From Gekko japonicus (Eukaryota): 62,517 bases of DNA. Location of the stretch: contig NW_015172070.1 of assembly GCF_001447785.1 (NCBI RefSeq), positions 252,320-314,836 of the forward strand, written 5' to 3'. The notes beneath the pieces are model-generated. The model did no database searches. It saw only the letters and a list, made by a program, of their open reading frames with translations, and had not been told where the DNA came from. The position numbers and the translations under genes were made by a program. Positions within the stretch are counted from its first letter, which is position 1; every line of letters starts with the position of its first letter. Shown here one piece after another: positions 10,545-34,937 of the stretch.

Positions 10545-10575
<31 letters not shown>

Positions 10576-16567: not shown

Positions 16568-19500
16568 TCAAGCCTCCTCTGTTGGCTTGCCGCGATGTTT
16601 CGTCTCTATTTCAGCACGGATATCATCCTGCAGAAGAAAAATCGCTACTTTTGATAGTGGTAGGTGGATATGAAAACCAATTTCCCTAGCGTTGCCAGCT
16701 GCCAGGTGGTAGCTGGAGATCTGCTGGAATTACAAATGATCTCCAGGCAAGAGAGATCGGTTCACCTGGAGAAAATGGCGACTTTGGAAGGTGGACTCCG
16801 TGGCATTCTAACCCCCCATTGAAGCCCCTCCCCAAACCCCGCCCTCTTCAGGTTCCACCAACAAAATATCCAGGTATTTCCCCAATCCTACTCTTAACTA
16901 GGAATGCTATCCAGAAGTGGGGCAGGATCTAATGAAATGAGGGGAGAAGGGAAGAGAGGAAAGGGGGTGATCCAAGCTGTATTCCAGCAAGCTGGAATTT
17001 CCTGCTCCGGCTATGAGGACTAGAAACTTGATTTAAAAAAGAGTATCTCTCCTGCTATGGACGTGAGGAATGGAATCTTGATTGAATAAAAGAGACACGT
17101 AGAATTTCTCACCCGTTTTCATGTGATTATCGAGGCTGTCCAATTATCCCTTTGCTTAGAATCCATATTCCCACAAGACTTACCACCTGGGTAAGACGTT
17201 TCAGCACTGGTATCAGGTGCAGCAATTCCTTGTCCTGCGGACTTCCCAGCCACTTTGGGATCAATATCACATTGGAAGTCTTAGCAGAGTGGAAGAGAAA
17301 CAGGGAGGAGGGAGACATTTATTTTGGGGTTTTTTTTTCTATATTTCTCCACACTACAGAGTGCCACTTGAAGATTTTAGCAAGCTCAGATACTAAAGAT
17401 TTGGGGCTCAAAATATAAGAGCGCAGGTGGAATGTGCAGTTAAAACAGCCCCTGAGTAACCTGAGTAACCACAGGGTCTACTCAGCTGACACGTGGGTTA
17501 CAGAGACAATGCCACAGGCGTAGGGCAAGAGTCTGAGCCAGCCCCATAGGAGTCTCTTGGCCAAGGCTCCCCCTAAGCTGCAGAGTCTTGTGAGCAAAAA
17601 TTCTACTTTGTGAGCTACTGGCATTAAAGTTGTCAGCGAGCGATCTGGCTTCTGCATAAATTGGTTTGCTCTGGAGCCCATCCTTCCTGTGCTGAGACAA
17701 AAAATGTGTGAGCCGGAGGCTAAAAAACTGTGGCCTAGCTCACACTAACTCAGCTTAGAGGGAACACTGCTCTTGGCTCAGCTTGTTTCTTGTGGCCAGG
17801 AGCCCTTTAAAGCTGGGAACTTCCCCGGTAAATCAAACAGCCAGATGACCCCTGTACAAACATGACAGCTTTCCATCTGGGGAGCTTGATTTTCCCATCT
17901 GAGAGTTGATTGCATGGATCTGGAGAAGGAAAGGCAACTTGTTTGCTCTCCTCCTATTGCTAATCGACCTGCCCCTCACGCGTCTCCTGCAGGGCTTTTT
18001 TTGTAGAAAAAGCCCAGCAGGAACTCATTAGCATAATAGGCCATACCCAACAGCAGGAACTCAGTAGCATATTAGGCCACACCCCTGACAGCACAGTTTA
18101 TTAGCATATTAGGCCACACCCCCATGTTATTAGAAGTGTGGTCATCCAGCCACACCCACCTTTTGCTTCTTATTCTGTTTACCTTGTTTGTTGTCAAAAC
18201 CCAGGGCTTTTTTTGGAGCAGGAACTTCTTTGCATGTTAGGCCACACACCCCTAATGTAACCAGTCCAAATGAGTTCCTGCTGTTGAGTGTGGCCTATTA
18301 TGCTAATGAGTTCCTGGCCAGGCGTGGCCAACTTAGGAGCCAGCCGGAACTCCGTTCCTGTGTGTTCCTGCCCAAAAATAGCCCTGGCTCTCCTGGCATA
18401 TCTCCCTTCTCTCCTGAGGACAGCTCCCATCCAGAATGAATTTTTCTTCCCCGCCCCAGAAAGACACCCTTAAGGCCCTTGTTCTCCTTGAAAGCGATCA
18501 GTTCATTAGAAGTTAGGCTGCTAACATTTCAGTGGCTAGATTCATTAAAATGGGATGATCAACAAAAAAAAAGGTGCCCTCCAATTAACACATTTACAAA
18601 AAAATATTCCCAGTTATGTGAATACAACTATTAACTAAACATGGCAGGTGCTACCTCAGAAGAGACACACACACACACACATCCTGCTTCCTCTGGTACC
18701 AAAGAGTGCCTCTTCCCAAGCAAGGCCTGCTCCATCAAAAGAAGATGCTTTAGGAACAGCCCCATCTCTCTTCCCTTGAAATCCTACTTTGGACCCATCC
18801 TTTTGTACAAGACAGTGTGTGGTTTGATGTGAGGAGAGGGTTAGCTTCTGTGTCAATCTGCTTAAGAGGTTTCCCCCTCAAAAAACATTTCTGTTCTGCT
18901 TCCTTTAAGCATGTGCTTGGAGAGTCACTTTCTGCGATGGTTCCCCACTGCACACAACATGGTTCAGTCTGGCAGATACCCTTCTTTAAGCTACAGGGCA
19001 CTGGGAAAAGAGGGAGAGGAAGGGTTGAAAACTGATCCAAACACTTACCTGGTAAGGAAATGCTTCCAAGCAATTTGCTACAGCCACAGTCCTGGCCAGG
19101 TCTCTCTGCAGTACAGAAAGATCCTTGATGTAATAGCCCTGGCTACACAGGCAGTCTTCTTGATAAAGCCCGTGTCTGGTAGGGTGAGAGAAGAGAGGAC
19201 GGGGCAGCAATTAAGCTGATTAACACATCCATCAGTTGGAAATGTTTAGATCGAGTAAAAAGGTGCTCTCTGATTAATCGGGAGTTTTTTTTAAAAAAAT
19301 GTTAAAATGTGTATAAAAAAGGTAAAGGTTTCCCTTGCTCGAAAGCCAGTCGAATCCGACTCTAGGGTTACGGTACTCATCTCCGTTTCTAAGCCGAAGA
19401 GCCAGCGCTGTCTGAAGACATTTCTGTGGTCATGTGGCCGGCATGACTAAACACCAAGGCGCACGGAACGCTGTTACCTTCCCACCGAAGTGGTCCCTAT

Positions 19501-22500
19501 TTATCTACTGGCAATTTCTTGCTTTCGAACTGCTAGGGTGGCAGGAGCTGGAACTAGAGACAGGAGCTCACTCCGTCATGCGGCACACTCGGGTCTCGAA
19601 CTGCTGAACTACTGACCTTCCACAGCCTGCAGTTCAGCGTCTTAACCACTTGAGCCACCGCAGCTCCTATATGTGTATAAGACAATATAAAAGTGGCAGG
19701 CGGCTAGCAGTATAATTCAGAAGAGGCATTCCACCTCCTCTCTCACGTGGGAAGGAATGCCTTGTTGCAGGAAAACATTTGTATTCTGGGCTACTTTTAG
19801 GCTGGCATTCTGATGCCAACAGAGAGGTCACTCAGACAACACTCTTGGAAATATTGGATGTGATGTTTAGGGTTGCCGATCTTCAGGTGGTGGCTGGAGA
19901 GTGCTCACTATTACAACTGATCTCCAGGCAACAGAGATCTGTTCACCCGGAGAAAATGGATGTTTTGGAAGGCAGACTCTATGGCAGTGATAGCGAACGT
20001 TTTAGAGACCGAGTGCCCAAACTGCGACCCAAAACCCACTTATTTATCGCAAAGTGCCAACACGGCCATTTAACCTGAATACTGAGGTTTTACTTTAGAA
20101 AAAACAACTCATGCATTAACTTAAGATGATCCAAACAAAGTAAGGAAAGCAATCCCGAATGCTTTCATTGACTTAAAAGTATTTGACAGAGAATTCGACA
20201 CTTTAATGATGGTCTGGGCCTGGCTGGGGCAGTGGCACGCATGTCTACAGAGAGGGCTCTGAGTGCCACCTCTGGCACCCGTGCCATAGGTTCGCCACCA
20301 CTGCTCTATGGCATTCTACCCCGTCGAAGTCCCCCCCAACCTCACCCTCCTCAGGCTCCACCCCCAAAATCTCCAGGTATTTCCCAACTTGGAGCTAGCA
20401 ACCCTAGATTAACTGAGCTAAATACAAGGACTCTCCACCTCCCTTCCATCCAACCCCCTTGACTCAGGGTTACCAACTTCCAGGAGTTTTCCTGGAATTA
20501 CAACCAATGCTCCCTCTAAGCTATGGAGTCTTGTGAGCTACTGGCATTAAAGTTGTGAGAGAGCGATTTGGCTACAGCATCAATTAGTTTGCTCTGGAGC
20601 CACCCTTCCTGAGCTAGGACAAAAATGTGTGAGCCGGAGGCTAAAAAACTGTGAATAGCTCACACTAACTCAGCTTAGAGGGGACACTGAAACTGATATC
20701 CAGGCTACAAAGATCAGTTCCCCTGGAGAAAACGGCTGCTTTGGAGGGTGGACTGTATGGCACCAAAATCCCCGCTGAGCTCCCTTCCCTCCCAAGGCAC
20801 TGCAACCCAAATATCCAGGAACTTTACAAAGCTGGAGTTGGCAATCCTGTTAATTGGCTTGGAGTTCTGCAAGAACATTTCTCACCTGATCAGCTTTCTC
20901 TGCAGTCCAAAGGCCTCCAGAATTTTATCAGCATAGTCCTGCTTGGCAGCCGTGAAAATGAAGACCTGAAGTCAGACAAGGAAAGTGGCCTGAAGTTTAT
21001 TTCCAGCCAGTTGTGGAATAATCCTTGAATAACAACACCCCCCACCACGCAAAACCCCTATTCAAGGCTGGAATCAAATGGAACATTTTTCAGAATGGTG
21101 GAGGCGGTGGGATAGCACCACCTAATGCAAAACATGTGTTTCCTCTCTGTTGCGGGGAGTTCTGCTTTCAGTGCATTCCAAGCCCCATTCATCCTCCAGG
21201 AAAGAAGACACACATAGAGTCTTTAATGCAAATACAGCTGTTGTGTGGAGGAGGGACTATTGGCTAGCAACTGTAATGTCATTGGAGCCAAGTAACATCC
21301 CACCCCCAGCCTCCAGAGCACTTTTGCACCTGCTTTGTTATTTTTTATTTTTTTAAAATTCCCCAGTAAAAGTACATATGTAGATAGATTATATTTTAAA
21401 ATTAAACACAAATACTGCCAAGACATATTGACGAAAGCTTTCTTATAGTTTAAAATCCATTTTGTACTGATCACAGCAGGGCTCTGCAACTTGGGATCCG
21501 AATGCCGCTCAGAATGGATTCAAACACAGCACCAGGAGCATGCAGGGATAGGGATACCGGGTCCTCCCAGCCACTCGCGGAGCATGGGGTTGCCAGATTG
21601 ACGTTGGGAAACTCCTGGAGATTTGGGGATAGAGCCCAGGGAGGACAGAGACCTCACTGGAGTACAATGCCACAAAGTCCACCCCGCAAAGCATCCATTT
21701 TTTCCAGGGGAACTGATCTCTGTAGTCTGGAAATGAGCTGGAATTCCAGGAGATCCCCAGGTCCCACCTGGAGGCTGGCAACCCTAAGGGGTACTCCCCT
21801 CCAATGTTCCCTCTAAGCTGTGGAGTCTTGTGAGCAAAAATTCTACTTTGTGAGCTACTGACATTAAAGTTGTAAGCGAGCAATTCAGCTACTGCATAAA
21901 TTAGTTTGCTCTGGAGCCCTCCTTCCCAAGCTAAGACAAAAATGTGTGAGCTGGAGCAGGGGTCGTTTCGTAGAAAAAGAGCTAGGGGAACTCATTAGCA
22001 TAACTCATTAGCATATGCCACACCCCCTGACATCACCGGAAGTGTGTCATAAGGCCACACCCCCTGACATCACCAGAAGTGCGTCATAAGACCACACACC
22101 CCGCCCCCAACGGTCCTGGCCACCGTCGCCGGCCTTGCAGCTCCACTGCCGAGCCCCATGAGGGGCCCGGCGGTGGGGCGGAAGTGCAAGGAAGCCCCGC
22201 GACGGCCCTCCCTGGCCCCAGGCAGGCAGGGGTGGGGAGAGGCAGGGAGGAAGCAACTTACCCTCCCTCTTCTCCTGCCTCCTCCTGGCTGAATGAGGGC
22301 CGGAAGCGGGGTGGCCGGAAGCAGGGGGCGGGGCTTTGTCATGTGCCCTGCCCCCCTGTACCTCACCTGGGGGAACTGCGATCCCCCGCGATCCCCCCCG
22401 AAATGACCTCTGAGCTGGTGGCTAAAAAACTGTAAGCTAGCTCACGCTAAGTCAGTTTAGAGGGAACACTGGTCACCTCCCTGGCAGATATGGCTGGCCC

Positions 22501-25500
22501 ATGGCAACAGTAAAGCAGGAGACAATCATATGAAGAGGAGGAGGGAAAAGAAGAAGAGATAGGATTTATACTCCATCCTTCACTCAGAGTCTCAGAACGG
22601 CTCACAGTCTCCTTCCCTTCTCTCCACAACAGACACCCTGTGAGGTAGGTGGGGCTGAGGAAGCTCTTTTGAGGACTGTTCTTGAAAGAACAGCTCTGAG
22701 AGAGCTGTGACTGACCCAAGGTCACCCAGCTGGCTGCATATGGAGGAGTGGGGAATCAAACCCAGTTCTCCCAGATTAGAGTCCACCGCTCTTAACCGCT
22801 ACACCAAACTGGCTCTCTGTAACTTGCCACTGCCTTGGAAGGGGCTAGGTGACAGGGGTTAGATGCCAGACTTTGCATTCAGCTTTCTGGCACCGTTGTT
22901 ATTTAGAGACCTCATTGTTCTGTTTCCCAATAAAGGACTTGCAACAACCAGTATTTGGGCTGCATCTCACCACATGGAAACAGGGTGAGGGTCTTGGAGG
23001 AAATAGCTGCTTTGGAGGGCGGTTCTCTGTGGCACTGTACCCTGCTGAGGTCCCTCCCCAAACTGCACCCTCCCCCCCCAAATCTCCTGGTATTTCCCAA
23101 CCCAGAGCTGGCAACCCTAGCTAAAGCACCAAATTCTAGATCTGCCTATCTGGGATCCAGCACGGGGGGGGGGGGGGCTTGGCACTTTTTGCATGTGCAG
23201 AAAAAAGGGGAAGGCCTTTTTTAAAAAAGGGGAAGGCCCTTTGTTGTCAGCAGGATGCTGAGCCTCCTCTGTGATCGCACTGTCAGGGTTTCTCTCTCAC
23301 CCCTGTCCAGGGATGGGAGCTAAACCGAGCATTCAGCAACAATTAAACAAACCCCAGGAGAATGTCTGTACACTCTCCAGGCTTTACCAGTAGTCACTGC
23401 CACCAGGATCTCTCACAAAAGGTCCCCACCAAAGATCAGGAGCAGAGATCCTAACTCCTGCCTGGTCTACAGGACTTAACAACTTTACCAGCTCTGTACC
23501 AGGGCTGCAAACAAGTAATTAACACAGCGGTAGCCTCCTTAGGCGAACGGCTTAGACACAAGATTCAGTCTTAGAAATCAGGTTGCAACAGAGGGAACAA
23601 GTCCAGATAATATTGATTATATATTCTCTTTATTCAGTGCACAAGCATGCACATAACATGAGACTAGCAAAAGGTAAGAAAACAAATGATATCTATAGCT
23701 TGTTCAGCTCTAACTACACAACAGAGGTATTCCATAGTTACCAGGCTTTTAGAGGTACCAGATGGTTCAATGTGCAAATATTCTAAGGTCTCACCAGGGA
23801 ATCTTGAAAAGGAACCCCATGGTGCTGTGGGCAGCTAAGTCCAGCTTGGCTGCCTAGTAGTAAAACTTCATGTTAGCAGCACAGTTGACAAGCAAGCAGC
23901 CAGTCCAAAAGAACTCTTTGTTTCCAGAGAGGAACTCCTATTTTCCCATATGGATTATTGCAATTATACCCCTTCCGTCACTACAGGGTATGGCCATTAC
24001 CCAATAGTGAGAGAGTGGGGAGGCATGCACAATCTCTGGTTACCATGCGTTGCCAGGCAAGGTATATTTTGATTGGCTAGGAGTTGGGAATCCTGTCTGC
24101 AGTTCAGGTACTCCAACTCCAGCCTCTTCAAGTGTCCATGTGTCATGTCAGGGAATGCTTTTGATGTGCTTATGTACTGGGCATAGCTCTTTCCCATGCT
24201 TGGGAAGGCGCCTGCATGTCTCTCTGCCCCAGCAAAGGTGTCAAAGTGTCTTGTATATGGATATGAGGCCTGGCCATTTGGTAGGCCATCTGCTCAGGTG
24301 ATGAAAGTCACACGGAAGTGTCACCAGCTAAGGCCATCTGTCCCAGGCAGGAAGAATTCAGAAAAGACTTTTTCTGTACACTCACAACCTGCAGGAAGGA
24401 ATGATTTGCAAAACAGGAACACACAACACTGGTTTTTTAATAAAATCCCCCCCCCCCCGCATTTAGGCCACAAACCAACATTAACATACCTCATAGATTT
24501 TGGCAAGTTCTTCCAGGAACTCTTTAAGGTGGGGCCTCAACTTGAAGGAAACCTCACAGAAACACAAAAACCAAGCCAATGGGTGAATGACGTAGGCCAG
24601 GGATTAGGGTTGCCTGGTCTGGGTTGGAAAATACCTGGAGACTTTGGAGGTGGATTTGGGAGAGGGCGAGGTTTGGGCAGGGGAGGAGCCTCAGCATGGT
24701 GCAATGCCACGGAGACCTCCCTTCAAAGCAGCCATTTTCTCCAGGGGAGCTGATCTCTGTCAGCTGGGAATCAATTGTAAAAGCAGGGGATCCCCAGGTA
24801 CCACCTGGAAGTTGGCAACCCTACCAGGGGTCCCCAACATTTTTGAGCCTGCGGACACCTTAGGAAGTGGGTGGGTGGGCGCAGCCACAAAATTACTGCC
24901 ACAGGAGGTACAGCCAGCCAGGAAAAGGTCGCCCCAGTTCACCATTATCACCATCACAATAACACAAATAAAATCAATAAATTTAGCCATAAAGGTGTAG
25001 CAGCTTCAAGTCCCCACTCATGCCATGGAAGCTTGCTGGGTGGCCTTGGGCCAGTCACACCCTCTCAGCCTAACCTACCTTGCAGGGCTGTTGTGAGGAT
25101 ATAACAGAGGAGAGGAGAATGAAGTAAGCTGCTTTGGGTCCCCATTGGGGTGTAAAGCAGGATATAAACAAAGTAAAATAAAATATAATTATCAAGGAAC
25201 CTGTCCTCCATGAGTATATTTAAATCCCTAGAAACTTAACCACTGTGTTGCAGGAACAATATGGTGCTGAAGAGCAATGCTCCCCCTGAGCTGTGGGGTC
25301 TCGTGAGCCACTGGCATTAAAGTTGTGAGCAAGCGATTTGGTTACTGCATTAAATTAGCTTGCCCTGGAGCCCTCCTTCCTGAGCGAAGACAAAAACGTG
25401 TGAGCCAAAGGCTAAAAAACTATGAACTAGCTCACACTAACTCAGCTTAGAGGGAACACTGCTGAACAGTGAAGAATGGCTTTACTTATAGAATCACAGA

Positions 25501-28500
25501 AACTTGTTTCCGTCAATAAGCCGTCACAGTGGCGTTTTGTTATTTTTTCCCCCCTAGAGAGTCAATGGGAAATACTTTGTAAAGCAGAGGCTTCCCATAA
25601 GGGCCATGTGTGCTCATCTTCATGACGAGCATCACCCAGCCTGAGCACAGGCGGAAGGAGAGAAGTCCAAGGAGATTCCCGCTGTGCCCACTTTGGGGCT
25701 CAACCGACAGCAAGCACACTGACCTTATAGTGCTGGCCCTGGAAATGCACGGTGAATGTGGAGGCATCTTCCCAGTGAGTGGTCAAGGAAGACACAGCTA
25801 AAGTTTCCTCCTGCAGGGGCCCAAAGGAAAGGCAAAGCTGCCCATACGGGGGCTCTGATGCATTAGGCACAAAGGGATGCGCTGCCGCCACCAGATGGCA
25901 CCCAAGCACATCAAAAACCGGGAAGGAGACAAAGAAGAGCATCACCTGATTATGTTTCCAAAGTCCCAAACCAAGGCCCACTCTGTGCTCCGTAACTGCT
26001 AGGCGCCCCAGCCCTTTTGCCTGATGGCCGGCAGCGTGGGTCGTCCCAGTGCACAGTTTTGGCCCCTTCCTGCAGCTCTCTGCTACTTCCATTTCACTTC
26101 TGCTCACTTCCTTTTCAGCCCTCTCTCTTCCTCTCTCGGATCCCTGGTTGTTGCCCACAGCACACCTCTCTGCACATCCCAGGGCAGATTATTCTTTCCC
26201 CTCCCCATAAGCGGAACTGGCTTGTCAGCTTCCCTCAATGTACCCGCACTGCTTGTCAACATTCTCTTCCTGAGCATTTCTCTTGCAGCGGCTAGCACAG
26301 GGGTGGCCAAACTGTGGCTCGGGAGCCACGTGTGGCTCTTTCACACATATTGTGCGGCTCCCAGCGGGGCAGCTGGGGAAGCAAAGGAGAGGCATCCCTC
26401 CCCAATTGGTCTTTCCTTCCCCAACTAGTTTTCTTTCCACCTTTCTTTCTCCCTTCCTTCCTTTCTCTCTCTTTTCCTTCCTTCCCCCTCCCTCGCTTCC
26501 CCATCTATTTGCTTTGTTTCTCTCTCTTTCTCTCTTTCCACCTCTTTCATTCATTCTTTCCACCTCTCTCATTCTTTCTTTCCACCTCTCTCTTTCTCTT
26601 AGACAAATAAATATCATTAGCAAACAAATAAAAGTCATTGGACAAATAGATATCATCAGGGGTCGTTTCGTAGAAAAAGAGCTAGGGGAACTCACTAGCA
26701 TAACTCATTAGCATATGCCACACCCCCTGACATCACCGGAAGTGTGTCATAAGGCCACACCCCCTGACATCACCGGAAGTGTGTCATAAGGCCACACCCC
26801 CTGACATCACCAGAAGTGTGTCATAAGGCCACACACCCCGCCTGGCTGCCAATGGCGGTCTTGCAGCTCCACTGCCGAGCCCCATGAGGGGCCCAGTGGT
26901 GGACCTGCAAGGCCGGCGGGAGTGCAAGGAAGCCCCGTGAAGGCCCTCCCTGGCCCTAGGCAGGCAGGGGTGGGGAGAGGTAGGGAGGAAGCAACTTACC
27001 CTCCCTCTTCTCCTGCCTCCTCCTGGCTGAATGAGGGCCGGAAGCAGGGCGGCCGGAAGCAGGGGGCGGGGCTTCGTCATGTGCCCCGCCCCCCGTACCC
27101 CGTACCTCATCCGGAGGAACTGTGATCCCCCGCGATCCCTCCCCGAAATGACCTCTGGATATCATTATCAATATCTGTTTTTACCCCTTTTGTTTTTATT
27201 TTTGGCAGTCCCGTTTAATGTTAATAAAAATGTGTGTGTAACATTTGTCTTGCAGCTCTCAGACTTCAGCTCTTTATTCTATGTGGCTCTTACGTTAAGC
27301 AAGTTTGGCTAGGAGGTTGTAAGAACATCACTGCAACTTCCCTAATGGTGCCTCCATGCAACACAGGCAGTAGGGACTCAGCCTTGACGCACAACCTCTT
27401 CGGCTGCCAGTTTCTTGGCACTCTGGGCTGTAGCATGGTGTGGCGGAAGTGGCAGGGGAAATCCAGGAGAGAGAGCCACATATATACTTGGATTGGGTCC
27501 AGAAAGGGAGAGGCCCTGGCACACCCCTGTGAAGCCAGACTTTTTAAGGCTGTCCCTCTAGGCTTCAGTCAAGATTATCCCAAAAAAAGTCTTACCAGTT
27601 CCAGGACCACAGTATTCTTTGGTGTCCGGCGAGTCTTCATGGGGATTTTCTTCTTCCTCTGGGATTTCTGGGTGGTTTCTAGGGGGGGGAATCTAAACGA
27701 TGAAAGAGACGGGATTGCAGAACTCTTCATTTATCTGTCTAGCATATTCTTTGCTTCGATTCTCCCCCCCACCCCATCTTTTAGTCCTCTTGTTGGCACC
27801 AGTAACGTTTCCAACTAGGTATCAAGCTACCCAGAGGGGCAGGCATGATACAGCCTGCTCTCATCAGATCTTATAAGCCAAGCAGGGCTGGATCTCAGTT
27901 GGGAGACCATCGTGGGAGACTCTGCAGAGGAAGGCAATGGCACACCAGCTCTGCTTCGTATTTGCCTTGAAAGCCTCTAGCTGAGGTTGCCTTAAGTCAG
28001 TTGTGACTTGACGGTAGGCATCAAGCCACCCTGTACTTTTCTCTTGGTGGTCTCCCATCCACGTACTAAGCAGAGCTGACCCTGCTTAACTTCTGAGATC
28101 TGACGAGGCCCAGCTAGCCTGGTCCATCCAGGTCAGGGCCATAAAACCCTACCAGAAGCACACTCAAGGCAGCTCACAACATAAAACCATTATTTGTTAA
28201 AATGTAAAAAGGTAAAGGTTTCCCTTGCTCGAAAGCCAGTCGAATCCGAGTCTAGGGGTGCGGTGCTCATCTCCGTTTCCAAGCCGAAGAGCCAGCGCTG
28301 TCCGAAGACATTCCCGTGGTCATGTGGCCGGCATGACTAAACACCAAGGCGCACGGAACGCTGTTACCTTCCCACCGAAGTGGTACCTGTTTATCTACTT
28401 GCAATTTCTTGCTTTCGAACTGCTAGGTTGGCAGGAGCTGGAACTAGAGACGGGAGCTCACTCCGTCATGCGGCAACTCGGGTCTCGAACTGCAGAACTA

Positions 28501-29103
28501 CTGACCTTCCACAGCCTGCAGTTCAGAGTCTTAACCACTTGAGCCACCGCAGCGCCTTGTTAAAATGTACCGCCATCTTTAAAAAAAAGTAACAAAGCCC
28601 ACCCACACACACACAAAGAAGGCCACAGCATAAACTGTTGGGTAGCCAAAATTATTCACGTAACAGTCTTCAGGCTAGAATCAGCTTGCAGAAAATGACT
28701 AAGTTCCCTAGTTAAAAGCCTGATTTGAAAGAAATATTTTGGTCTGGGGCCCCAAAGAGCGTAAATGCCAGGCGAGCCTCAGTGGGCGAGGACATTCCAC
28801 AGGCCCTCCCTTCATCTAAAAGACACAGGAGGAGCTACGTCTGAAGGACAGGCTGGAAATGAGCCACTGGGTTTGGGGTTTCTCTCCTGCGACAATTTGT
28901 TTTCAGAGATAGCTTTGTACCTCAATAGTCCCTACTTACACACAGAGAGGTGTTTCTACTTTTGGCGTACCATAGCGAATACCCTTCCGGCGTTGGCCAG
29001 CACCCTTCACTTTGTGTTGTTCCAGTGAACCTGTTCCAGTGACCGCTTTCTGTGCCCTGCCCCATCCCTCCTCCAGAGAGGTCCCATTTCCACAAGAAGC
29101 CAT
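16568..29103 (-). CDS. CTDSPL2/SCP4-like FCP1-homology (HAD) protein, predicted catalytically inactive; exons 29103-28940, 27692-27596, 25810-25724, 24552-24490, 20965-20886, 19175-19049, 17279-17184, 16627-16568 (774 nt, 257 aa)
   Basis: Spliced: MASCGNG...ETPLCV|FPPLETTQKSQRKKKIPMKTRRTPKNTVVLEL|EETLAVSSLTTHWEDASTFTVHFQGQHYK|VSFKLRPHLKEFLEELAKIYE|VFIFTAAKQDYADKILEAFGLQRKLIR|HGLYQEDCLCSQGYYIKDLSVLQRDLARTVAVANCLEAFPYQ|TSNVILIPKWLGSPQDKELLHLIPVLKRLTQV|DDIRAEIETKHRGKPTEEA*. It is collinear with the recalled CTDSPL2 phosphatase domain. All introns are GT-AG and in phase. The first exon is less certain. Confidence 0.85.
17562..17769 (-). mobile_element. hAT-type MITE family A
   Basis: Perfect 8-bp TSD CTCTTGGC. 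Other copies at 20505-20689, 21802-22471 (interrupted), 25274-25461, 30996-31199, 35031-35236, 41076-41281 and 57492-57610 (partial). Confidence 0.8.
19318..19667 (-). mobile_element. Sauria SINE, near full length
   Basis: (ACCTTT)n-type tail (AAAGGTAAAGG on +) and a tRNA-like head. Near-identical to 28208-28556 and 53390-53607. Confidence 0.85.
19985..20303. mobile_element. hAT-type non-autonomous element nested in a TAGGGTTGCC-family element
   Basis: TIR CAGTGATAGCGAAC / GTTCGCCACCACTG; perfect 8-bp TSD CTCTATGG. Confidence 0.75.
21957..22412 (+). mobile_element. hAT-type MITE family B (octamer/KLF/ETS-rich), nested in a family A copy
   Basis: TIR CAGGGGTCGTTTCG / CGAAATGACCTCTG; TSD AGCTGGAG/AGCTGGTG. 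Confidence 0.85.
22545..22818 (-). mobile_element. tRNA-derived squamate SINE, full length
   Basis: Reverse strand begins GAGAGCCAGTTTGGTGTAGCGGTTAAGAGCGG (A box) ... GGGTTTGATTCCCC (B box) and ends in a (TCT)n-like tail. Confidence 0.75.
23270..24312 (-). mobile_element. Possible solo LTR
   Basis: TGTGA...TCACA termini and an internal AATAAA on - (~23628). No convincing TSD. Confidence 0.3.
24604..24823. mobile_element. Representative of the abundant ~200-bp TAGGGTTGCC...GGCAACCCTA TIR family (many other copies, e.g. 16686, 21586, 29406, 35540, 40807, 54021, 56987, 59343)
   Basis: Terminal inverted repeat TAGGGTTGCC/GGCAACCCTA with a shared core (CCTGGAGA..TTTGG...TTTTCTCCAGGGGA.CTGATCTCTGT). 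Confidence 0.7.
26657..27157 (+). mobile_element. hAT-type MITE family B
   Basis: Same TIRs; perfect TSD GATATCAT; three 37-bp internal tandem units. Confidence 0.88.
28208..28556 (-). mobile_element. Sauria SINE
   Basis: Near-identical to 19318-19667. Confidence 0.85.
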
Positions 29104-29714
29104 TTTGCTTCACACTGGCACAGAGAACATCGGACAGTGACAGGCCTGCAACTGTTTTGGAGCCTAAAGCAGAAAACAGGAAAGAGGAAGGCAGCCCCAC
29201 AACATACTCACGCATTCAGAGCATCCACTTGGGGAGGAATGTCTGACTGGACTCCTCTCAGATTTGGAGAGTCGCCGCTCAGCTTCCATTTGGGCAACCG
29301 GAGGCTTTCTGTGTCTGCAGGAAGCACATTTTGGATACAGAGCAAGCCACCCCCCCCGGTACATTCTGCAGTGCAGCAACATATAGCGCCAGAGCAGCAT
29401 AACAGTTAGGGTTTCCAGCCTCCAGGTGGGACCTGGAAATCTCCCAGAATTTCAACTGATCTCCAGACAACTGATATCTCTCCCCCTGGAGAAAATGTAG
29501 AGTTGCCAGATCCAGGTTGGGAAATATCTGTAAAAGTTGGGGGTGGAGCCTCAGGAGGCGGGGTTTGGGGAGTGGAGGGACCAATAGGGTATAATGCCAT
29601 CGAGTCCACCTTCCAAAGTCACCATTTTCTCCAGGTGAACTGATCAATTGTAATCCTAGGAGATTTTCAGCCACCACCTGGAGGTTCACAACCCATACTT
29701 CATAGCATTATACC

Positions 29715-30026
29715 CAGAGGTCATTTCAGGGGGGAACGTGCAGGGGGCGGGGCACATGACGAAGCCCCGCCCCCTGCTTCCGGCCGCCCCGCTTCCGGCC
29801 CTCATTCAGCCAGAAGGAGGCAGGAGAAGAGGGAGGGTAAGTTGCTTCCTCCCCGCCTCTCCCCACCCCTGCCTGCCTGGGGCCAGGGAGGGCCTTCGCG
29901 GGGCTTCCTTGCACTCCCGCTGGCCTTGCAGGTTCACCGCCGGGCCCCTAATGTCAGGGGGTGTGGCATATGCTAATGAGTTATTCTAATGAGTTCCCTA
30001 GCTCTTTTTCTACGAAACGACCCCTG
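29715..30026 (-). mobile_element. hAT-type MITE family B, internally deleted
   Basis: Same TIRs in reverse orientation; perfect TSD ATTATACC. Confidence 0.85.
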
Positions 30027-30251
30027 ATTATACCTAGCTGAGGCCCCTCCCCAAACCCCATCCCTCTCAGACTCCACCCCGAAATCTTTAGGAATTTCCC
30101 AACCTCTAGGTGGAGCTTGGAGATCGTCTGCTATTGCAACTGATCTGCAGACAACAGCAATCAGTTCCCCCGGAGAAAATGGCTGCTTTGGAAGGTGGAT
30201 TCTATTGCATTATACCCACCAAGATTTCACCCTCCCTAGGTTCCACCCCTA

Positions 30252-30317
30252 GGCGGGATCTGGTCCATGGGGTCGCGAAGAGTTGGACTCGACTGTGCGA
30301 CTGAACAACAACAAGAA
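30252..30317 (+). mobile_element. Very short Bov-B 3' end
   Basis: GTCCATGGGGTCGCGAAGAGTTGGACTCGACT...(CAA)n, flanked by TSD GG(T/C)TCCACCCCTAG. Confidence 0.75.
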
Positions 30318-31966
30318 GGCTCCACCCCTAGAATCTCCAGGAATTTCCTAACCCAGAGGCGGCAACCCTAACCCTGACTCTCTTTTCTTTAGGAATTCCC
30401 ACCTCTACCGCCGCCACTGCACCTGGAATTAATTGCAACCAGGGGTGGGCAGGAACGCACCGGAACAGAGTTCTGTCTGGCTTCAGGGGTGGCCATGCCC
30501 ACTACAGTCAAAACCTCTGCATGCGTGGCTACAGAGGGAAGGCCTGGAGAGCGACACCCTCCCTGACGACTCCAAGGTGGGCACCTTCCCTTCCCTTCAC
30601 GGGGGGGCTTGCACGGGCTCCCCACAGCCATGGGCAAGCCAAGGGAAGGCATGGGGTGTGGCTTAATAGGCTAATGAGCTGTGCTGTCAGGGGTGTGACC
30701 TAATAGGCTAATGAGTCTGTTGTTGGGTGTGGCCTATTATGCTAATGAGTTCCTGCTGGGCTTTTTCTACCAAAAAAGCCTTGATTGCAACTATATTGCA
30801 CTTTCAAGGGCCACTTTCCACTCACATATATATTGGATCTGGGAACAGTTTGGGGACCTCAAGTAGTCTGTGAGCATTTGCATCTCAAGCCAGATCCTGC
30901 AGAGGATCACATCCAGGATCCCTCCCTTTTCTCTACTTCGAAGGCATCACCCACATCCTTCATCCTATCCAGGCACCAAGTATCTCAGTCATAACCAGTG
31001 TTCCCTCTAAGCAGAGTTAGTGTGAACTAGCGCAGTTTTTTAGCCTCCGGCACATGCTTTTTTGACTTAGCTTAGGAAGCATGGCTCCAGAGCAAACTGA
31101 TTTAGGCAGCGGCCAATTTGCTCGCTCACAACTTTAATGCCAATAGCTCACAAAGTAGAGTTTTTGCTCACAAGACTCCACAGCTTAGAGGGAGTATGGG
31201 TCATAATCCACATTCTTGTCCACGTACTCTGCGGGCACTCAAAGCGACTCACTGCCAGAACATTCCCTGCTTCAGCTTCCAGGACAATCTCTTGTTTCTA
31301 GGCCTGGCAACGCGACCTGTGGTTTTGTAGACATGTTTGCTGTTTTTAAAAGATCTATAATTTATGGCAGGTAACCTCATCTGTAACATATCCCTCTTCC
31401 AACATTGCTGACTCTGGTCTTGCTATAGTTTTATATCCACAGATATCGGGACCTAAACGGCCATAACGGGCTAAGAATAGACAGTGACAAGGATGTGCCG
31501 TGTTCCATCAGCTCTTTAACAGACCCATTTTCTTGTTAAACAAAGATTAAATCCACATAAACACCTATACATTGTGTCCTGTTTTAGCTGTCTTTTTTTG
31601 GGGGGGATCATACTTTCTGCAATGTGTCACACTTTCTCCTTTCAGCATCCTTGTTCTCAGATTCTTATCCATTCATTTGTTATCTTGCCCATCATCCAAG
31701 GAGCTCAGGCTGCCATTTAGGGTCCACTCCTCCTTATCGTTCTTCCCCACAACAGCCCCATGAGGTAGCAGGTTGTAGTCTTCTGGTGGGGCCTGGGGTC
31801 CTCTCAGAGATTGGTTTCCCTGGAGAAAATGGCTGCTTTGGAGGGTGGACCTATGGCTTCACATCCCTGCTGAGCTCCCGCCACTCCCCCATGCGCCCTC
31901 CTCGGGCTCCACCCCTAAATCCCCAGGAATTTCCCACCCAAGAGTTGGCAATTCTAGAGGTAAGAC

Positions 31967-32396
31967 CAGGGGTCGTTTCGTAGAAAAAGAGCTAGGGGAA
32001 CTCATTAGCATAACTCATTAGCATATGCCACACCCCCTGACATCACCGGAAGTGTGTCATAAGGCCGCACACCCTGCCCCCAACGGTCCCGGCCACCACC
32101 GCCGGCCTTGCAGCTCCACTGCCGAGCCCCATGAGGGGCCCGGCGGTGGACCTGCAAGGCCGGCGAGAGTGCAAGGAAGCCCTGCGAAGGCCCTCCCTGG
32201 CCCCAGGCAGGCAGGGGTGGGGAGAGGCAGGGAGGAAGCAACTTACCCTCCCTCTTCTCCTGCCTCCTCCTGGCTGAATGAGGGCCGGAAGCGGGGCGGC
32301 CGGAAGCAGGGGGCGGGGTTTTGTCATGTGCCCCCCCTGCACCTCACCCGGGGGAACTGCGATCCCCCGCGATCCCCGCCCCCGAAATGACCTCTG
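31967..32396 (+). mobile_element. hAT-type MITE family B
   Basis: Same TIRs; perfect TSD GGTAAGAC. Confidence 0.88.
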
Positions 32397-32483
32397 GGTA
32401 AGACGACAGACTGTGTCCAGCCCAAGAGAGGGGATAGGAACACAGGTTGGCCCAGTCTGAGTCTGGTACTCTAACCTCACATC

Positions 32484-32526
32484 NNNNNNNNNNNNNNNNN
32501 NNNNNNNNNNNNNNNNNNNNNNNNNN
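32484..32526. other. Assembly gap
   Basis: Run of N. Confidence 1.
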
Positions 32527-33522
32527 GGATCTAGAATGTCTCCTTTTCCTCAACAGTCAGCTGCCCTTAAGCTGCCGACTGGGAATTTGTTTGCAGCACT
32601 GATACTACAAACAGTGGGCTCGGTAGAGACTGGAAGTAGCTACCTCACTACCATCTCTTAAGGCATATCCGGAGCCATCTGGGACTGAACTGGACAATCC
32701 ATCTACCCTGATATTAACTACTCTGACTGATTGGCAGGGCAGTACTCAGGACGCTCAGGCAGAGAGAGGCCTTCCAAACCCTCAGCAGAGCCGCTGAAGG
32801 AGAGGGCTGGATGGGGGGACAATGTTCCAGGGGCGCTGGTCATTCTGGGGGTCTACGAGGCTGAGCGACAGCGTGACTTGTTTTCTTCATGCAAGGTTTG
32901 GGTTGGATTTTGGCAATAGGATAGGGTTGCCAGGTCTCAGCTGACCACCAGTGGGGAATGGGAGGGTAGGGATGCCAGCTCCAGGTTGGGAAACTCCTGG
33001 AAATGTGGGGATTGAGCCTGGGGGTGACAGGGACCTCAGTGGGGTACAGTGCCCATAGGGTCTACCCTCCAGCATTCATTGTCTCCAGAGGAATTGATCT
33101 CTGTAGTCTGGAGATGAGCTGGGATCCCCAGGAAGAGGGCCCTTGGTGGTTCTTGGCAGCTTGCCCCAAGATCCTTTATTAACTGGAGCAGAGGTCCATC
33201 AGTGGCTATTAGCCACAAGGTATAGATAGGGGCTCTGGGGCAAGTGATGCTCTGTCTTCTTGGTGCTTGGGGGGGGGTCAACAGTGGGAGGGCTTCTAAT
33301 GTCCTGGCCCCACTAGTGGACCTCCTGATGGCACCTGGTATTTCTGGCCACTGTGTGACACGGAGTGTTGGACTGGATGGGCCTTTGGCCTGATCCAACA
33401 TTGGCGTCTCTTATGTTCTTATGAAATGCTAAGGATTGAGTCCGGGGCCTTCTACAGGCACAGCAAGGGCTCTGCCACTGAAGCAACGGTCCCCCTATCT
33501 AAAAGCAGAACAGCATCATGGG

Positions 33523-33728
33523 CAGTGCTCCCTCTAAACTATGGAATCTTGTGAGCAAAAATGCTACTTTGTGAGCTACTGGCATGAAAGTTGTGAGCAG
33601 GTGATTTGTCTACTGCATAAATTAGTTTGCTCTGGAGCCCTCCTTCCTGAGCTGAGACAAAAATGTGTGAGCTGGAGGCTAAAAAACTGTGAGCTAGCTC
33701 ACACTAACTCAGCTTAGAGGGAACACTG
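33523..33728 (-). mobile_element. hAT-type MITE family A
   Basis: Perfect TSD ATCATGGG. Confidence 0.85.
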
Positions 33729-34382
33729 ATCATGGGTAGAGTTTTGCTCATGAAGTCGAAGCCACGTTATGAAGAGTCCATCCAGCTCAGCACCATCTCT
33801 TCTGACTAATAGCAGCTTTCCAGGGACTCTGGCAAAAATAAGAAGGTGTTTTCCTGAGATCTTTATATTGGGGCTCATCTTTTCGGTCTGAATTCTGGCT
33901 CTACATTCCTTTCCATGTCAGAGCAGGCGCCAGCCTAGTAAGACCAAGACCACCGAGCTGTGCTTCTTCTCCCCCTACAAGCTCTATAGTGTTATTTCCA
34001 GGACTTACTTTCTAACCTGGAAAAGGAAAAGTAGCTGGCAATTGGAAATGAGGCCTCCTCGCAGGAAGCTGACACTTCGCAGGATCCCTGGGAGTGCGCT
34101 GCAAAAGGCAATTCCATCAAAGCACCTGCTGGAGAGAGTGAGAGATGGTTAGTGGATGCCTCGGGAAGGGGCTATTTGCCCACTTGGGAGGGGGAGAGCC
34201 CTTCTAAACTGGGCATATAGTGCCATAGAGTCCCCCTTCCAAAATGGCCCTTTTCTCCAAGTGAACTGATCTGTCGCCTGGAAATCGAATCCTAGGAGAC
34301 CTCCAGCCACCCCCTGGAGGTTACAACCAGAGAGAACCATGGAAGAAGATTACACAACAAACAAAAATACTGTGGAGAATAA

Positions 34383-34937
34383 TGAAAACAAGCAGGCAAT
34401 ATATGTGTGTGTGTGTGAGAGAGAGAGAAAATGAAAATGCATTAACAATAATAAAGTCACAACTTTTCAGCATTCAGAGACAATGTCAACATTCAAAGGG
34501 CATATTGCATGTAGAAGTCCAAATCCACATCAAAGCAAGCCATAACAATCCACATGAAATAAAGCTGTCTGTAGAAATGAAGTGTGTGTGTGTGTAATAT
34601 TGCTCCAGCTCCAGCTGAACTCTCTGGATTTGTGAATATGAGGTTCCTGTATTCTCTTCTGAAGCAACGTTTTGCGAAACGGTTTCCAAGTCGACATTAG
34701 ATTCGTTAGGAAGAAAGGAAGAAAGAACATTCATATCTCACTGATAAGAATCACATACACAAGTGCTTCATTTCTACAAACAACTTTATTTCATGTTGAC
34801 TGTTATGACTTGCTTTGATATGGATTTGGACTTTTACATGCAATATGCACTTTGAATGTCGACATTGTCTCTGAATGCTGAAAAGTTGTGACTTTATTAT
34901 TCACACACACACATATATATTACTTACTTGTTTATCA
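34383..34937. repeat. Long imperfect inverted repeat (~200-bp arms, ~150-bp spacer)
   Basis: AATAATAAAGTCACAACTTTTCAGCATTCAGAGACAATGTC (34448) versus GACATTGTCTCTGAATGCTGAAAAGTTGTGACTTTATTATT (34861); the complementarity continues across both arms. Confidence 0.9.

What the first reader, a model, noticed from the sequence alone, without database searches (positions are those of the whole stretch)
16568..27692. CTDSPL2-like gene with both catalytic aspartates changed to glutamate (DLDET to ELEET): a candidate CTD pseudophosphatase
Seen: seven exons splice in frame without stops into a complete FCP1/SCP-type domain. Motif I spans an intron and reads VVLEL|EETL (GAA CTG|GAG GAA ACT; 27596-27601 and 25802-25810). 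The motif IV region reads VAVANCLEAF. Established: FCP/SCP HAD phosphatases need DxDx(T/V), where Asp1 is the nucleophile and Asp3 the general acid/base, plus a Mg2+-binding acidic motif IV (IDNS in CTDSPL2). D-to-E substitutions are used to make inactive or substrate-trapping mutants. Inference: losing three catalytic acids, two conservatively, while keeping the ORF and exon chain suggests a selected catalytically dead paralog. It could act as a phospho-substrate binder, decoy or scaffold rather than being random decay. The ORF track misses this because the motif is split by an intron. The basic stretch QRKKKIPMKTRR is a possible NLS. I know of no human gene of this type next to LSM7 or ADAMTSL5.
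Basis: partly seen in the sequence, partly recalled or inferred. Interest (0 to 1): 0.85.

Follow-up and report, generated by a model that had tools for sequence, protein, structure and literature searches.

The report
Gecko CTDSPL3: conserved dead-looking CTD phosphatase
This is an intact nine-exon gecko copy of the little-known vertebrate gene CTDSPL3, a small CTD-phosphatase relative in which all reptiles and birds carry glutamate in place of both catalytic aspartates, so it probably works by binding rather than by removing phosphate.

Summary
All seven exons, the split motif I (VVLEL|EETL) and VAVANC at motif IV sit at the stated coordinates. Every intron is GT-AG and no exon has a stop. 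Two further upstream coding exons give a nine-exon, 822-nt, 273-codon gene on the minus strand (34117..16568).

It is not an unknown paralog. It is the ortholog of a gene that NCBI annotates as "CTD small phosphatase-like protein 3" (CTDSPL3), often mislabelled CTDSPL2-A/B or TIM50. I found it in fish, lungfish, amphibians, turtles, crocodilians, birds, squamates and marsupials. No eutherian copy turned up. The closest relatives are gekkonid geckos (88-89% identity over exons 3-9).

The ancestral DLDET plus DN motifs survive in bichir, elopomorph fish, lungfish, salamanders and basal frogs. All 17 sauropsid rows that cover both positions have Glu at the second, and 16 have Glu at the first (Varanus has Gly). 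Squamates have also lost the motif IV Asp. Catalytic Asp was replaced by Glu at least seven separate times. The phosphate-contacting Thr and Lys remain, and a gecko ortholog folds confidently onto SCP1.

Best reading: a conserved, fast-evolving, probably inactive FCP/SCP-fold protein. I found no functional literature.

The parts
34009..34117 (-). Coding exon 1 (MELPFAAHSQGSCEVSASCEEASFPIASYFSFSRLE, then one base of a split Asn codon). The start codon at 34117 is tentative.
   Evidence: tblastn with gecko orthologs P0197 and P0205. The donor is A|GTAAGT and the phase fits exon 2.
29212..29314 (-). Coding exon 2 (TESLRLPKWKLSGDSPNLRGVQSDIPPQVDALN); part of the poorly conserved N-terminal region.
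   Evidence: tblastn with P0197, P0207 and P0205. AG acceptor and GT donor.
27596..27692 (-). Coding exon 3. It holds the basic stretch QRKKKIPMKTRR (27661-27626) and the first half of motif I, VVLEL, with Glu (GAA, 27601-27599) at the nucleophile position.
25724..25810 (-). Coding exon 4. It holds the second half of motif I, EETL, with Glu (GAG, 25810-25808) at the general acid/base position.
   Evidence: 27 of 29 residues match Heteronotia and 28 of 29 match Gekko kuhli.
24490..24552 (-). Coding exon 5 (VSFKLRPHLKEFLEELAKIYE).
   Evidence: Pfam NIF profile positions 34-56.
20886..20965 (-). Coding exon 6 (VFIFTAAKQDYADKILEAFGLQRKLI). The motif II Thr (ACG, 20953-20951) is retained.
   Evidence: Found. 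Pfam NIF positions 56-81.
19049..19175 (-). Coding exon 7. The motif III Lys (AAG, 19126-19124) is retained. Motif IV reads VAVANC (19087-19070), with Ala (19078-19076) where the family has Asp.
   Evidence: Pfam NIF positions 82-135, E 1.6e-8. PDB alignment to SCP1 and SCP2.
17184..17279 (-). Coding exon 8 (TSNVILIPKWLGSPQDKELLHLIPVLKRLTQV).
   Evidence: Pfam NIF positions 124-156.
16568..16627 (-). Coding exon 9 (DDIRAEIETKHRGKPTEEA, then the stop codon).
   Evidence: tblastn with P0002, P0197 and P0207.

Best explanation
The locus is the gecko ortholog of vertebrate CTDSPL3. CTDSPL3 is an FCP/SCP-type (NIF, HAD-fold) small CTD-phosphatase-like gene, a sister family to CTDSPL2, that arose before bony fishes and tetrapods diverged. 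I found no eutherian copy.

Shown here:
- The gene is intact: nine GT-AG exons and 273 codons.
- Its motif I is ELEET instead of DLDET, and its motif IV is AN instead of DN.
- Glu is at the second catalytic position in all 17 sauropsid rows covering it, and at the first in 16 of the 17 rows covering it (Varanus has Gly). All nine squamate rows lack the motif IV Asp.
- The phosphate-contacting Thr (motif II) and Lys (motif III) are kept.
- The domain fold of a gecko ortholog is predicted with high confidence.

Inferred from established FCP/SCP chemistry:
- Asp1 forms the acyl-phosphate and is a Mg2+ ligand.
- Asp3 is the general acid/base.
- The motif IV Asp holds Mg2+.
- Without them the protein cannot carry out the normal two-step phosphoryl transfer, or does so very poorly. 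That makes it a pseudophosphatase.

Inferred, weaker:
- Each independent loss replaced Asp with Glu, so the carboxylates were kept. The Thr/Lys phosphate cradle also remains.
- The pocket is therefore probably still used to bind a phosphorylated Ser/Thr ligand or an anion.
- The protein would then act as a non-hydrolysing binder: a protector or decoy against CTDSPL2/SCP-type phosphatases, or a scaffold.
For: Identity:
- The representative search with exon 7 returned vertebrate CTDSPL3-type proteins first. Sources name them "CTD small phosphatase-like protein 3", 2-A or 2-B.
- CTDSPL3 forms a 54-row clade with SH-aLRT 100, separate from CTDSPL2, and its branching mirrors the species tree.
- Window exons 3-9 are 88-89% identical to gekkonid orthologs.

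Integrity:
- All nine exons have canonical splice sites, compatible phases and no stops.

Motif states across 63 proteins:
- DLD is kept in bichir, elopomorphs, lungfish, salamanders and basal frogs.
- E-x-E occurs in sauropsids and caecilians, DLE in most frogs and some fish, and ELD in marsupials.
- The minimum number of changes on the tree is 5 at each Asp position. Seven primary replacements are Asp to Glu and one is Asp to Ala.
- With two of eight non-synonymous single-base neighbours of GAY being Glu (both transversions), seven or more of eight by chance is below 1e-3 (my arithmetic).

Constraint:
- Identity to Heteronotia is 176/201 in exons 3-9 against 39/69 in exons 1-2 (Fisher p 1.8e-7).
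- 43 of 178 domain columns are invariant in 18 sauropsids, including the motif II Thr. The motif III Lys is kept in 17 of 18, with Arg in Paroedura.
- Per-site entropy correlates with that of the canonical-motif group (rho 0.58, p 1.6e-17).

Fold:
- In the AlphaFold model of Heteronotia CTDSPL3, ten-residue blocks across residues 91-250 average pLDDT 92-98.
- Foldseek superposes the model on SCP1 (1T9Z) with target TM-score 0.90 and rmsd 1.5 A over 176 columns.

Chemistry and precedent:
- The roles of the nucleophile Asp, the general-base Asp, Thr, Lys and the motif IV Asp in Fcp1 are described in PMC4436666.
- PDB entries 3L0Y, 3L0B and 3L0C are SCP1 D98A and D206A mutants. The D206A entries hold a phosphoryl intermediate (3L0B) and trapped phosphate (3L0C).
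- Fungal Tim50 is a NIF-fold protein that lacks DXDX(T/V), has no phosphatase activity and works as a binding receptor (PMC13216928).
Against: - No activity, binding or expression data exist for any CTDSPL3.
- RNA-read evidence could not be obtained. No ortholog DNA could be fetched, so dN/dS is unknown.
- The family evolves very fast in amniotes. Crown depth is 1.24 substitutions per site against 0.075 or less for CTDSPL2. Squamates are the fastest (root-to-tip 1.8-2.2), and lineages that lost an Asp are faster than those that kept both (1.36 against 0.80). This fits relaxed constraint as well as a change of function.
- Several database models skip an exon (Lerista lacks exon 4, Erythrolamprus X2 lacks exon 5). 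These may be annotation errors or real erosion.
- Glu could conceivably support weak or altered chemistry.
- The structure was predicted for an ortholog, not for the window's own spliced product.
- The motif counts rest on predicted proteins.
Confidence: 0.6

Rival explanations
1. It is still an enzyme. The two Glu residues, which keep the carboxylates, support phosphoryl transfer with altered geometry, a different metal or a different substrate. On this reading sauropsid CTDSPL3 is a non-canonical ExExT phosphatase or other hydrolase.
For: - Every independent primary loss went to Glu rather than to a neutral residue, so the carboxylates are under selection.
- The motif II Thr and motif III Lys are conserved.
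- The pocket-forming fold is intact.
- Some proteins classed as pseudophosphatases by motif have later shown activity. Human TIMM50 under acidic conditions and S. pombe Asp1 are examples named in PMC13216928.
Against: - Squamates, including this window, have also lost the motif IV Asp that positions Mg2+ (AVAN or AVAT).
- Varanus has Gly at position 1 and Eleutherodactylus has Ala. Neither could act as a nucleophile.
- From memory, not checked here: Asp-to-Glu changes of the HAD nucleophile abolish activity in FCP/SCP enzymes and are used to make inactive SCP1.
- Lineages that lost an Asp evolve faster. That is not expected if the same enzymatic function continued.
Confidence: 0.15
2. The gene is under relaxed selection and on its way to loss, as apparently happened in eutherians. 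It is still intact but has no selected function, and the motif changes are early symptoms of decay.
For: - Amniote CTDSPL3 evolves very fast compared with CTDSPL2, and squamates are the fastest.
- No eutherian ortholog was found.
- There is no CpG island at the 5' end.
- Some predicted orthologs lack an exon.
- No functional literature was found.
Against: - The E-x-E state is shared across sauropsids, so it is old, yet the ORF is intact with nine good splice sites in the window and in about 20 sauropsid species.
- The domain is far better conserved than the N-terminus among gekkonids (88% against 57%, p 1.8e-7).
- 43 of 178 domain columns are invariant across 18 sauropsids, and site constraint tracks that of active relatives.
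- The replacements are overwhelmingly conservative Asp to Glu.
- The gene tree follows the species tree without scattered losses.
Confidence: 0.12
3. It is a gene-model artefact. A canonical DxDxT-encoding exon exists elsewhere in the intron, and the ELEET junction is not the one used.
For: Motif I is split by a 1.8-kb intron, and no transcript reads could be laid on it.
Against: - The exon 3 donor (CTG|GTAAGA) and the exon 4 acceptor (CTGCAG|GAG) are canonical and in phase.
- Both exons are 78-97% identical to the same parts of independently predicted gecko proteins, which read LVLELEETL or LVLELEGTL.
- The same LVL[DE]L|[DE] arrangement is found in all 54 family members.
- Full-length family proteins P0163 and P0183 lie on Logan contigs of 1445 and 1197 nt. 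These are too short to hold introns, so they must be spliced transcripts, and they carry DLEET and DLEEV.
Confidence: 0.02

Closest known systems
CTDSPL3 ("CTD small phosphatase-like protein 3"; zebrafish ctdspl3), as annotated by NCBI and UniProt in fish, amphibians, reptiles, birds and marsupials
   Same: The window's gene is an ortholog. Its exon peptides are 88-89% identical to gekkonid family members over exons 3-9. The family forms one clade with SH-aLRT 100 that mirrors the species tree. Domain layout, motif I intron position and C-terminal DDIRAEI tail are the same.
   Different: Nothing distinguishes it from other gecko orthologs. It differs from fish, lungfish, salamander and basal-frog members, which keep DLD(E/D)T and mostly DN. 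The window has ELEET and AN. Database names are inconsistent (CTDSPL2-A, 2-B, TIM50, CTDNEP1-like), and I found no functional study.
CTDSPL2 (SCP4/HSPC129), the active sister family
   Same: It has the same NIF/FCP-homology fold and the same conserved IPxKTRxTP lead-in, FT(A/T)(A/S)K motif II and Y(I/V)KDL motif III. Over exons 3-9 the window is 43% identical to mole CTDSPL2.
   Different: CTDSPL2 keeps LVLDLDETL and IIIDNSP in every sequence examined, from insect and mollusc to mammals. Its substitution depth across the amniote sequences sampled is 0.075 or less, against 1.24 for CTDSPL3. It also has a longer N-terminal region (465-497 aa against about 270 aa).
SCP1/CTDSP1 and its engineered active-site mutants (PDB 1T9Z, 3L0Y D98A, 3L0B and 3L0C D206A)
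   Same: These are the best structural matches to the gecko ortholog model (target TM-score about 0.90, rmsd 1.5-1.6 A, 31% identity). The squamate motif IV state (Ala for Asp) is the natural counterpart of D206A, and the Glu at the second motif I position alters the same residue as D98A.
   Different: Those are laboratory mutants of an active enzyme. Here the substitutions are natural, combined (both motif I Asp plus the motif IV Asp) and fixed across large clades. Whether CTDSPL3 traps substrate or a phosphoryl group as D206A does is untested.
Tim50/TIMM50, a NIF-fold protein of the mitochondrial presequence translocase
   Same: It is a member of the same fold family. In fungi it has lost DXDX(T/V), has no phosphatase activity and works as a binding receptor (PMC13216928). 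It is structurally related (4QQF, 3QLE). It shows that this fold can be retained for binding alone.
   Different: It belongs to a different subfamily and is a mitochondrial inner-membrane protein with a transmembrane anchor. CTDSPL3 groups with CTDSPL2, not Tim50. The "TIM50" labels on some CTDSPL3 entries are automatic names.

Membership tests
FCP/SCP (NIF, PF03031) fold family of the HAD superfamily | Sequence match to the NIF/FCP-homology domain profile | tested here: met
   Exons 5, 6, 7 and 8 each match PF03031 on their own, in profile order (positions 34-56, 56-81, 82-135, 124-156 of 160). Exons 5, 7 and 8 exceed the 21.8-bit cut-off. Exons 3 and 4 were too short or divergent to score alone.
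FCP/SCP (NIF, PF03031) fold family of the HAD superfamily | SCP-like three-dimensional fold | tested here: met
   Tested on the gecko ortholog P0197, not on the window's own joined product. Ten-residue blocks across residues 91-250 have pLDDT 92-98. Foldseek to SCP1 1T9Z gives target TM-score 0.90 and rmsd 1.5 A.
Catalytically competent DxDx(T/V) aspartyl phosphatase | Motif I DxDx(T/V), with Asp1 as nucleophile and Asp3 as general acid/base | tested here: not met
   The window reads E-L-E-E-T (GAA CTG | GAG GAA ACT). Only the Thr is kept.
Catalytically competent DxDx(T/V) aspartyl phosphatase | Motif IV acidic residue (DN or DD) that positions Mg2+ | tested here: not met
   The window reads VAVANC, with Ala where CTDSPL2 and fish CTDSPL3 have Asp. 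The Asn is kept.
Catalytically competent DxDx(T/V) aspartyl phosphatase | Motif II Thr/Ser and motif III Lys, which contact the phosphate oxygens | tested here: met
   FTAAK Thr at 20953-20951 and YIKDL Lys at 19126-19124. The Thr is invariant in 18 sauropsid rows and the Lys is kept in 17 of 18.
Catalytically competent DxDx(T/V) aspartyl phosphatase | Measured Mg2+-dependent phosphatase activity | not testable with these tools
   This needs recombinant protein.
CTDSPL3 orthology group | Groups with CTDSPL3 rather than CTDSPL2 or other FCP/SCP subfamilies | tested here: met
   The CTDSPL3 clade has SH-aLRT 100. Window exons 3-9 are 88-89% identical to gekkonid CTDSPL3 and 43% identical to CTDSPL2. 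The window's row was not put in the tree because the joined model was not built.
CTDSPL3 orthology group | Conserved gene neighbourhood (LSM7, BTB-Kelch gene, ADAMTSL5) in other species | not testable with these tools
Pseudophosphatase (phosphatase fold kept, catalytic residues lost, gene retained) | Catalytic residues replaced while the fold and the gene are retained across a clade | tested here: met
   All 17 sauropsid rows covering the second catalytic position have Glu, and 16 of the 17 rows covering the first do (Varanus has Gly). The ORF is intact. Domain conservation is high and site constraint correlates with active relatives.
Pseudophosphatase (phosphatase fold kept, catalytic residues lost, gene retained) | Purifying selection shown by codon analysis, and expression shown | not tested
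   No ortholog DNA and no RNA reads could be obtained.

The most novel reading that the evidence does not exclude
CTDSPL3 is a vertebrate-wide family whose main selected function is not catalysis. Phosphoryl transfer has been given up at least five times independently: in sauropsids, caecilians, most frogs, paddlefish or sturgeon-like fish, and some teleosts. The nucleophile has been lost at least twice more, in the amniote stem and in caecilians. Nearly every replacement was the same conservative Asp-to-Glu change. This points to a phospho-ligand-binding "reader" or "anti-phosphatase" role, for example shielding CTDSPL2/SCP substrates, which the ancestral enzyme already had and which sauropsids now rely on alone.
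Probability: 0.3. Interest if true: 0.7.

Novelty: new member of a known kind. Interest (0 to 1): 0.55.

Why it matters
FCP/SCP phosphatases regulate RNA polymerase II, Smads and neuronal gene silencing. Engineered active-site mutants are their standard inactive or trapping tools. CTDSPL3 would be a natural, clade-wide version of such a mutant.

The family is present in most vertebrates, but I found no eutherian copy. That may explain why the searchable literature holds no functional work on it.

The family also offers a built-in comparison. Canonical DLDET members occur in bichir, eels, lungfish, salamanders and Xenopus. Half-lost members (DLE, ELD) and fully lost members (ELE, and ELE plus motif IV) occur in other lineages. 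The Asp-to-Glu change recurs each time.

This makes a concrete question testable: how does a phosphatase fold become a non-catalytic binder, and are the retained carboxylates needed for ligand or metal binding?

If the gene is merely decaying, the result is ordinary.

Tried and rejected

No ortholog DNA, synteny comparison or dN/dS was possible.

Joined model. All searches used single exons by reference. Identities were summed exon by exon, with split codons left out. The structure was predicted for the gecko ortholog P0197 instead. The window's gene is not a row in the tree.

Single-exon Pfam. Exon 3 gave nothing for NIF. Exon 4 gave only a chance ABM hit (E about 0.1). Both are too short to score alone.

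Other dead ends:
- A promoter/terminator scan was irrelevant to a eukaryotic gene.
- The search of earlier findings returned only this same finding.
- Literature searches for D96E/D98N SCP1 mutants found nothing. The statement that such mutants are inactive rests on my memory only.
- Simple TSP1 and PLAC regex searches found no ADAMTSL5 repeats. The NTR and spacer exons were found by Pfam instead.

Rejected readings:
- A lineage-specific pseudogene is ruled out by the intact ORF and clade-wide conservation.
- A mis-spliced model is ruled out by the orthologs and by intronless Logan transcript contigs.
- Membership of TIM50 or CTDNEP1 is ruled out; those labels are automatic names.

Human sequence. 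The window is not human, because its closest relatives are geckos. No human-like contig was handled.

Full report
**Observation**

On the minus strand, exon 3 ends ...GTC CTG GAA CTG at 27596 and is followed by GTAAGA. After CTGCAG, exon 4 starts GAG GAA ACT TTA at 25810. VAVANC lies at 19087-19070 and QRKKKIPMKTRR at 27661-27626. All have AG acceptors, GT donors and compatible phases, and none has a stop.

tblastn with gecko orthologs shows two more coding exons upstream, at 34117-34009 and 29314-29212. The gene therefore has nine coding exons, 822 nt and 273 codons. The ATG at 34117 is tentative. An N run at 32484-32526 lies inside intron 1; I did not fill it in.

Pfam NIF (PF03031) matches exons 5, 6, 7 and 8 separately and in profile order. 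Exon 7 aligns to SCP1, SCP2, CTDSPL and Tim50 chains in the PDB.

**What the gene is**

A HMMER search of 1.84 billion representative proteins with the exon 7 ORF gave vertebrate proteins as the best hits. Their sources name them "CTD small phosphatase-like protein 3", "2-A", "2-B" or, automatically, "TIM50".

A profile search with eight of them collected 111 proteins. They come from ray-finned fishes, lungfish, caecilians, salamanders, frogs, turtles, crocodilians, birds, snakes, lizards, geckos and marsupials. True CTDSPL2 from mammals, birds and invertebrates was also recovered. A search with koala CTDSPL3 found close relatives only in marsupials and no eutherian or monotreme copy. These searches are limited by shared words and by protein length, so this absence is only suggestive.

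In a maximum-likelihood tree of 63 proteins, the 54 CTDSPL3 rows form one clade (SH-aLRT 100) apart from CTDSPL2. Inside the clade the branching follows the species tree. This is one old orthologous gene.

Exon by exon, the window is closest to gekkonid geckos. Over exons 3-9 it is 88% identical to Heteronotia binoei, 89% to Gekko kuhli, 82% to Paroedura, 60-65% to other squamates and 43% to CTDSPL2. The window therefore comes from a gecko-like squamate and is not human.

**Neighbours in the window**

- LSM7 lies on the plus strand at about 2.5-5.6 kb.
- A BTB-BACK-Kelch gene lies on the plus strand at 9.1-15.5 kb.
- On the minus strand beyond 48 kb there are an NTR-module exon and an ADAM-TS spacer exon, consistent with ADAMTSL5.

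**State of the catalytic motifs across the family**

| Group | Motif I | Motif IV |
|---|---|---|
| CTDSPL2, all sequences examined | LVLDLDETL | IIIDNSP |
| CTDSPL3: bichir, four elopomorph fishes, one unnamed metagenome-derived fish-like sequence, lungfish, two salamanders, Ascaphus, Discoglossus, Xenopus, Hymenochirus | D-L-D | DN in the fishes and salamanders |
| CTDSPL3: paddlefish group, two teleosts, pelobatoid and neobatrachian frogs | D-L-E | varied; Asp mostly kept |
| CTDSPL3: marsupials | E-L-D | LTDS |
| CTDSPL3: caecilians | E-L-E | Asp kept (AVDPAP, ALDSAP) |
| CTDSPL3: turtles, alligator, birds | E-L-E | Asp mostly kept |
| CTDSPL3: squamates | E-L-E or E-V-E (Varanus G-L-E) | A[NT], Asp lost |

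- The sauropsid counts rest on 18 rows. The Lerista model lacks the second half of motif I, and the Elgaria model is cut at the start of it.
- On the tree each Asp position needs at least five changes. One change at position 1 is an artefact of the truncated Elgaria model.
- At position 3 all five changes are Asp to Glu. At position 1 there are two Asp-to-Glu changes (amniote stem and caecilians), plus Glu to Gly in Varanus and Asp to Ala in Eleutherodactylus.
- Seven of the eight primary replacements are thus Glu. Only two of the eight non-synonymous single-base neighbours of GAY encode Glu, both by transversion. Seven or more of eight by chance is below 1e-3 (my arithmetic). The carboxylates appear to be kept by selection even where the exact catalytic geometry is not.

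**Is it maintained?**

Expression and dN/dS are therefore untested. The indirect evidence is as follows.

- (a) The ORF and all sixteen splice sites are intact in the window. Full-domain proteins are predicted in about 20 sauropsid species.
- (b) Constraint is uneven. Against Heteronotia, exons 1-2 are 39/69 identical and exons 3-9 are 176/201 identical (Fisher p 1.8e-7).
- (c) In 18 sauropsid sequences, 43 of 178 domain columns are invariant. Per-column entropy correlates with that of 21 canonical-motif sequences (Spearman 0.58, p 1.6e-17). Relatedness inflates such p-values.
- (d) The motif II Thr is invariant. The motif III Lys is kept in 17 of 18, with Arg in Paroedura.
- (e) Two full-length family proteins, with DLEET and DLEEV, sit on Logan contigs of 1445 and 1197 nt. 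These are too short for introns, so they are spliced transcripts. They are from a fish and a frog, not a sauropsid.

Against maintenance:

- The family is very fast-evolving in amniotes. Crown depth is 1.24 substitutions per site against 0.075 or less for CTDSPL2.
- Lineages that lost an Asp have longer root-to-tip paths (1.36) than those that kept both (0.80).
- Squamates are the longest, at 1.8-2.2.

**Fold**

I folded the Heteronotia ortholog with a 49-sequence alignment instead.

- Ten-residue blocks across residues 91-250 average pLDDT 92-98. Residues 1-59 are below 50.
- Foldseek places the domain on SCP1 (1T9Z) with target TM-score 0.90 and rmsd 1.5 A over 176 columns at 31% identity.
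- It also matches SCP2, CTDSPL, CTDNEP1, TIM50 and Fcp1.

**Mechanism**

In Fcp1 the first Asp attacks the phosphoserine phosphorus, forms the acyl-phosphate and is a Mg2+ ligand. The second Asp is the general base for hydrolysis. Thr243 and Lys280 hold the non-bridging phosphate oxygens. Asp297 and Asp298 hold the metal (PMC4436666).

The window's protein keeps the Thr and Lys. It has Glu at both motif I positions and Ala at the motif IV Asp. The Ala is the natural counterpart of SCP1 D206A, whose crystal structures hold a phosphoryl intermediate (3L0B) and trapped phosphate (3L0C).

I infer that normal turnover is lost or very poor. I infer more weakly that the pocket still binds a phosphorylated ligand or an anion, so that the protein acts as a binder, decoy or scaffold.

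Fungal Tim50 is a precedent in the same fold. It has lost DXDX(T/V), has no phosphatase activity and works by binding (PMC13216928). My recollection that D-to-E SCP1 mutants are inactive could not be confirmed in the library.

That stretch is nearly invariant across CTDSPL2 and CTDSPL3. It sits in the 81-90 block, which has pLDDT 87. It may be structural, and nuclear import was not tested.

**What is already known**

The gene is annotated, inconsistently, in many genomes. In the searchable library "ctdspl3" occurs in three papers. Two concern Toxoplasma. The third only lists the gene among positively selected loach genes. Searches for the full gene name, and for pseudophosphatase together with CTDSPL2, found nothing.

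I therefore class this as a new member of a known kind: a NIF-fold pseudophosphatase in an annotated but unstudied gene family.

**Verdict**

The gene is real, intact and clade-wide, and it very probably lacks normal catalysis. Its activity, expression, selection and function still have to be measured.

Noticed in passing
window 9102-15509 (+): A BTB-BACK-Kelch gene lies between LSM7 and CTDSPL3. It has one 380-codon open exon with BTB and BACK domains (9102-10241) and Kelch-repeat exons at 11890-12498 and 15177-15509. A CpG-rich segment lies at 9001-9800.
   Followed up: partly
window about 2470-5642 (+): LSM7 exons lie here (DKEKKKKESILDLSKYIDKTIRVKFQGGRE; ASGVLKGFDPLLNLVLDGTIEYMR; last exon ending ...IPNPFIQQQDG). 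A CpG-island-like segment lies upstream at 1001-1600.
   Followed up: partly
window 48375-48734 (-) and 61355-61657 (-): An NTR-module exon (Pfam E 8e-10) and a weak ADAM-TS spacer match (E 0.0055, below the cut-off) lie on the minus strand. No TSP1 repeat was found by a simple pattern search.
   Followed up: partly
window 22047-22435 and 26784-27125: Two copies of the same GC-rich interspersed element lie in introns 5 and 3 of the gene. Their minus-strand ORFs of 98 and 108 aa are near-identical (MRY..GAGHMTKPRPLLPA...). Next to the second copy is a roughly 37-nt unit repeated three times at about 26720-26840.
   Followed up: no
window about 11000, 17500, 21800 and 41200: A dispersed repeat family recurs in both orientations in introns and intergenic DNA. 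It is recognisable by the pseudo-ORF ...SSSQSRIFAHKTPQLRG.... It is probably a SINE or LINE fragment.
   Followed up: no
window 34100-36000: There is no CpG-island-like segment at or upstream of the first coding exon of CTDSPL3, unlike LSM7 and the Kelch gene. This would fit a tissue-restricted promoter or an unseen non-coding 5' exon.
   Followed up: no
window 32484-32526 and 45684-45977: Two N runs are present. The first lies inside intron 1 of CTDSPL3 and the second in intergenic DNA before the ADAMTSL5-like exons. They were left as they are.
   Followed up: no
proteins P0219, P0241, P0264, P0265 (marsupial CTDSPL3): Marsupial orthologs carry E-L-D at motif I and LTDS at motif IV. They sit on a very long stem branch (1.18 substitutions per site). 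This is a third, different way of degrading the site, and no eutherian counterpart was found.
   Followed up: partly
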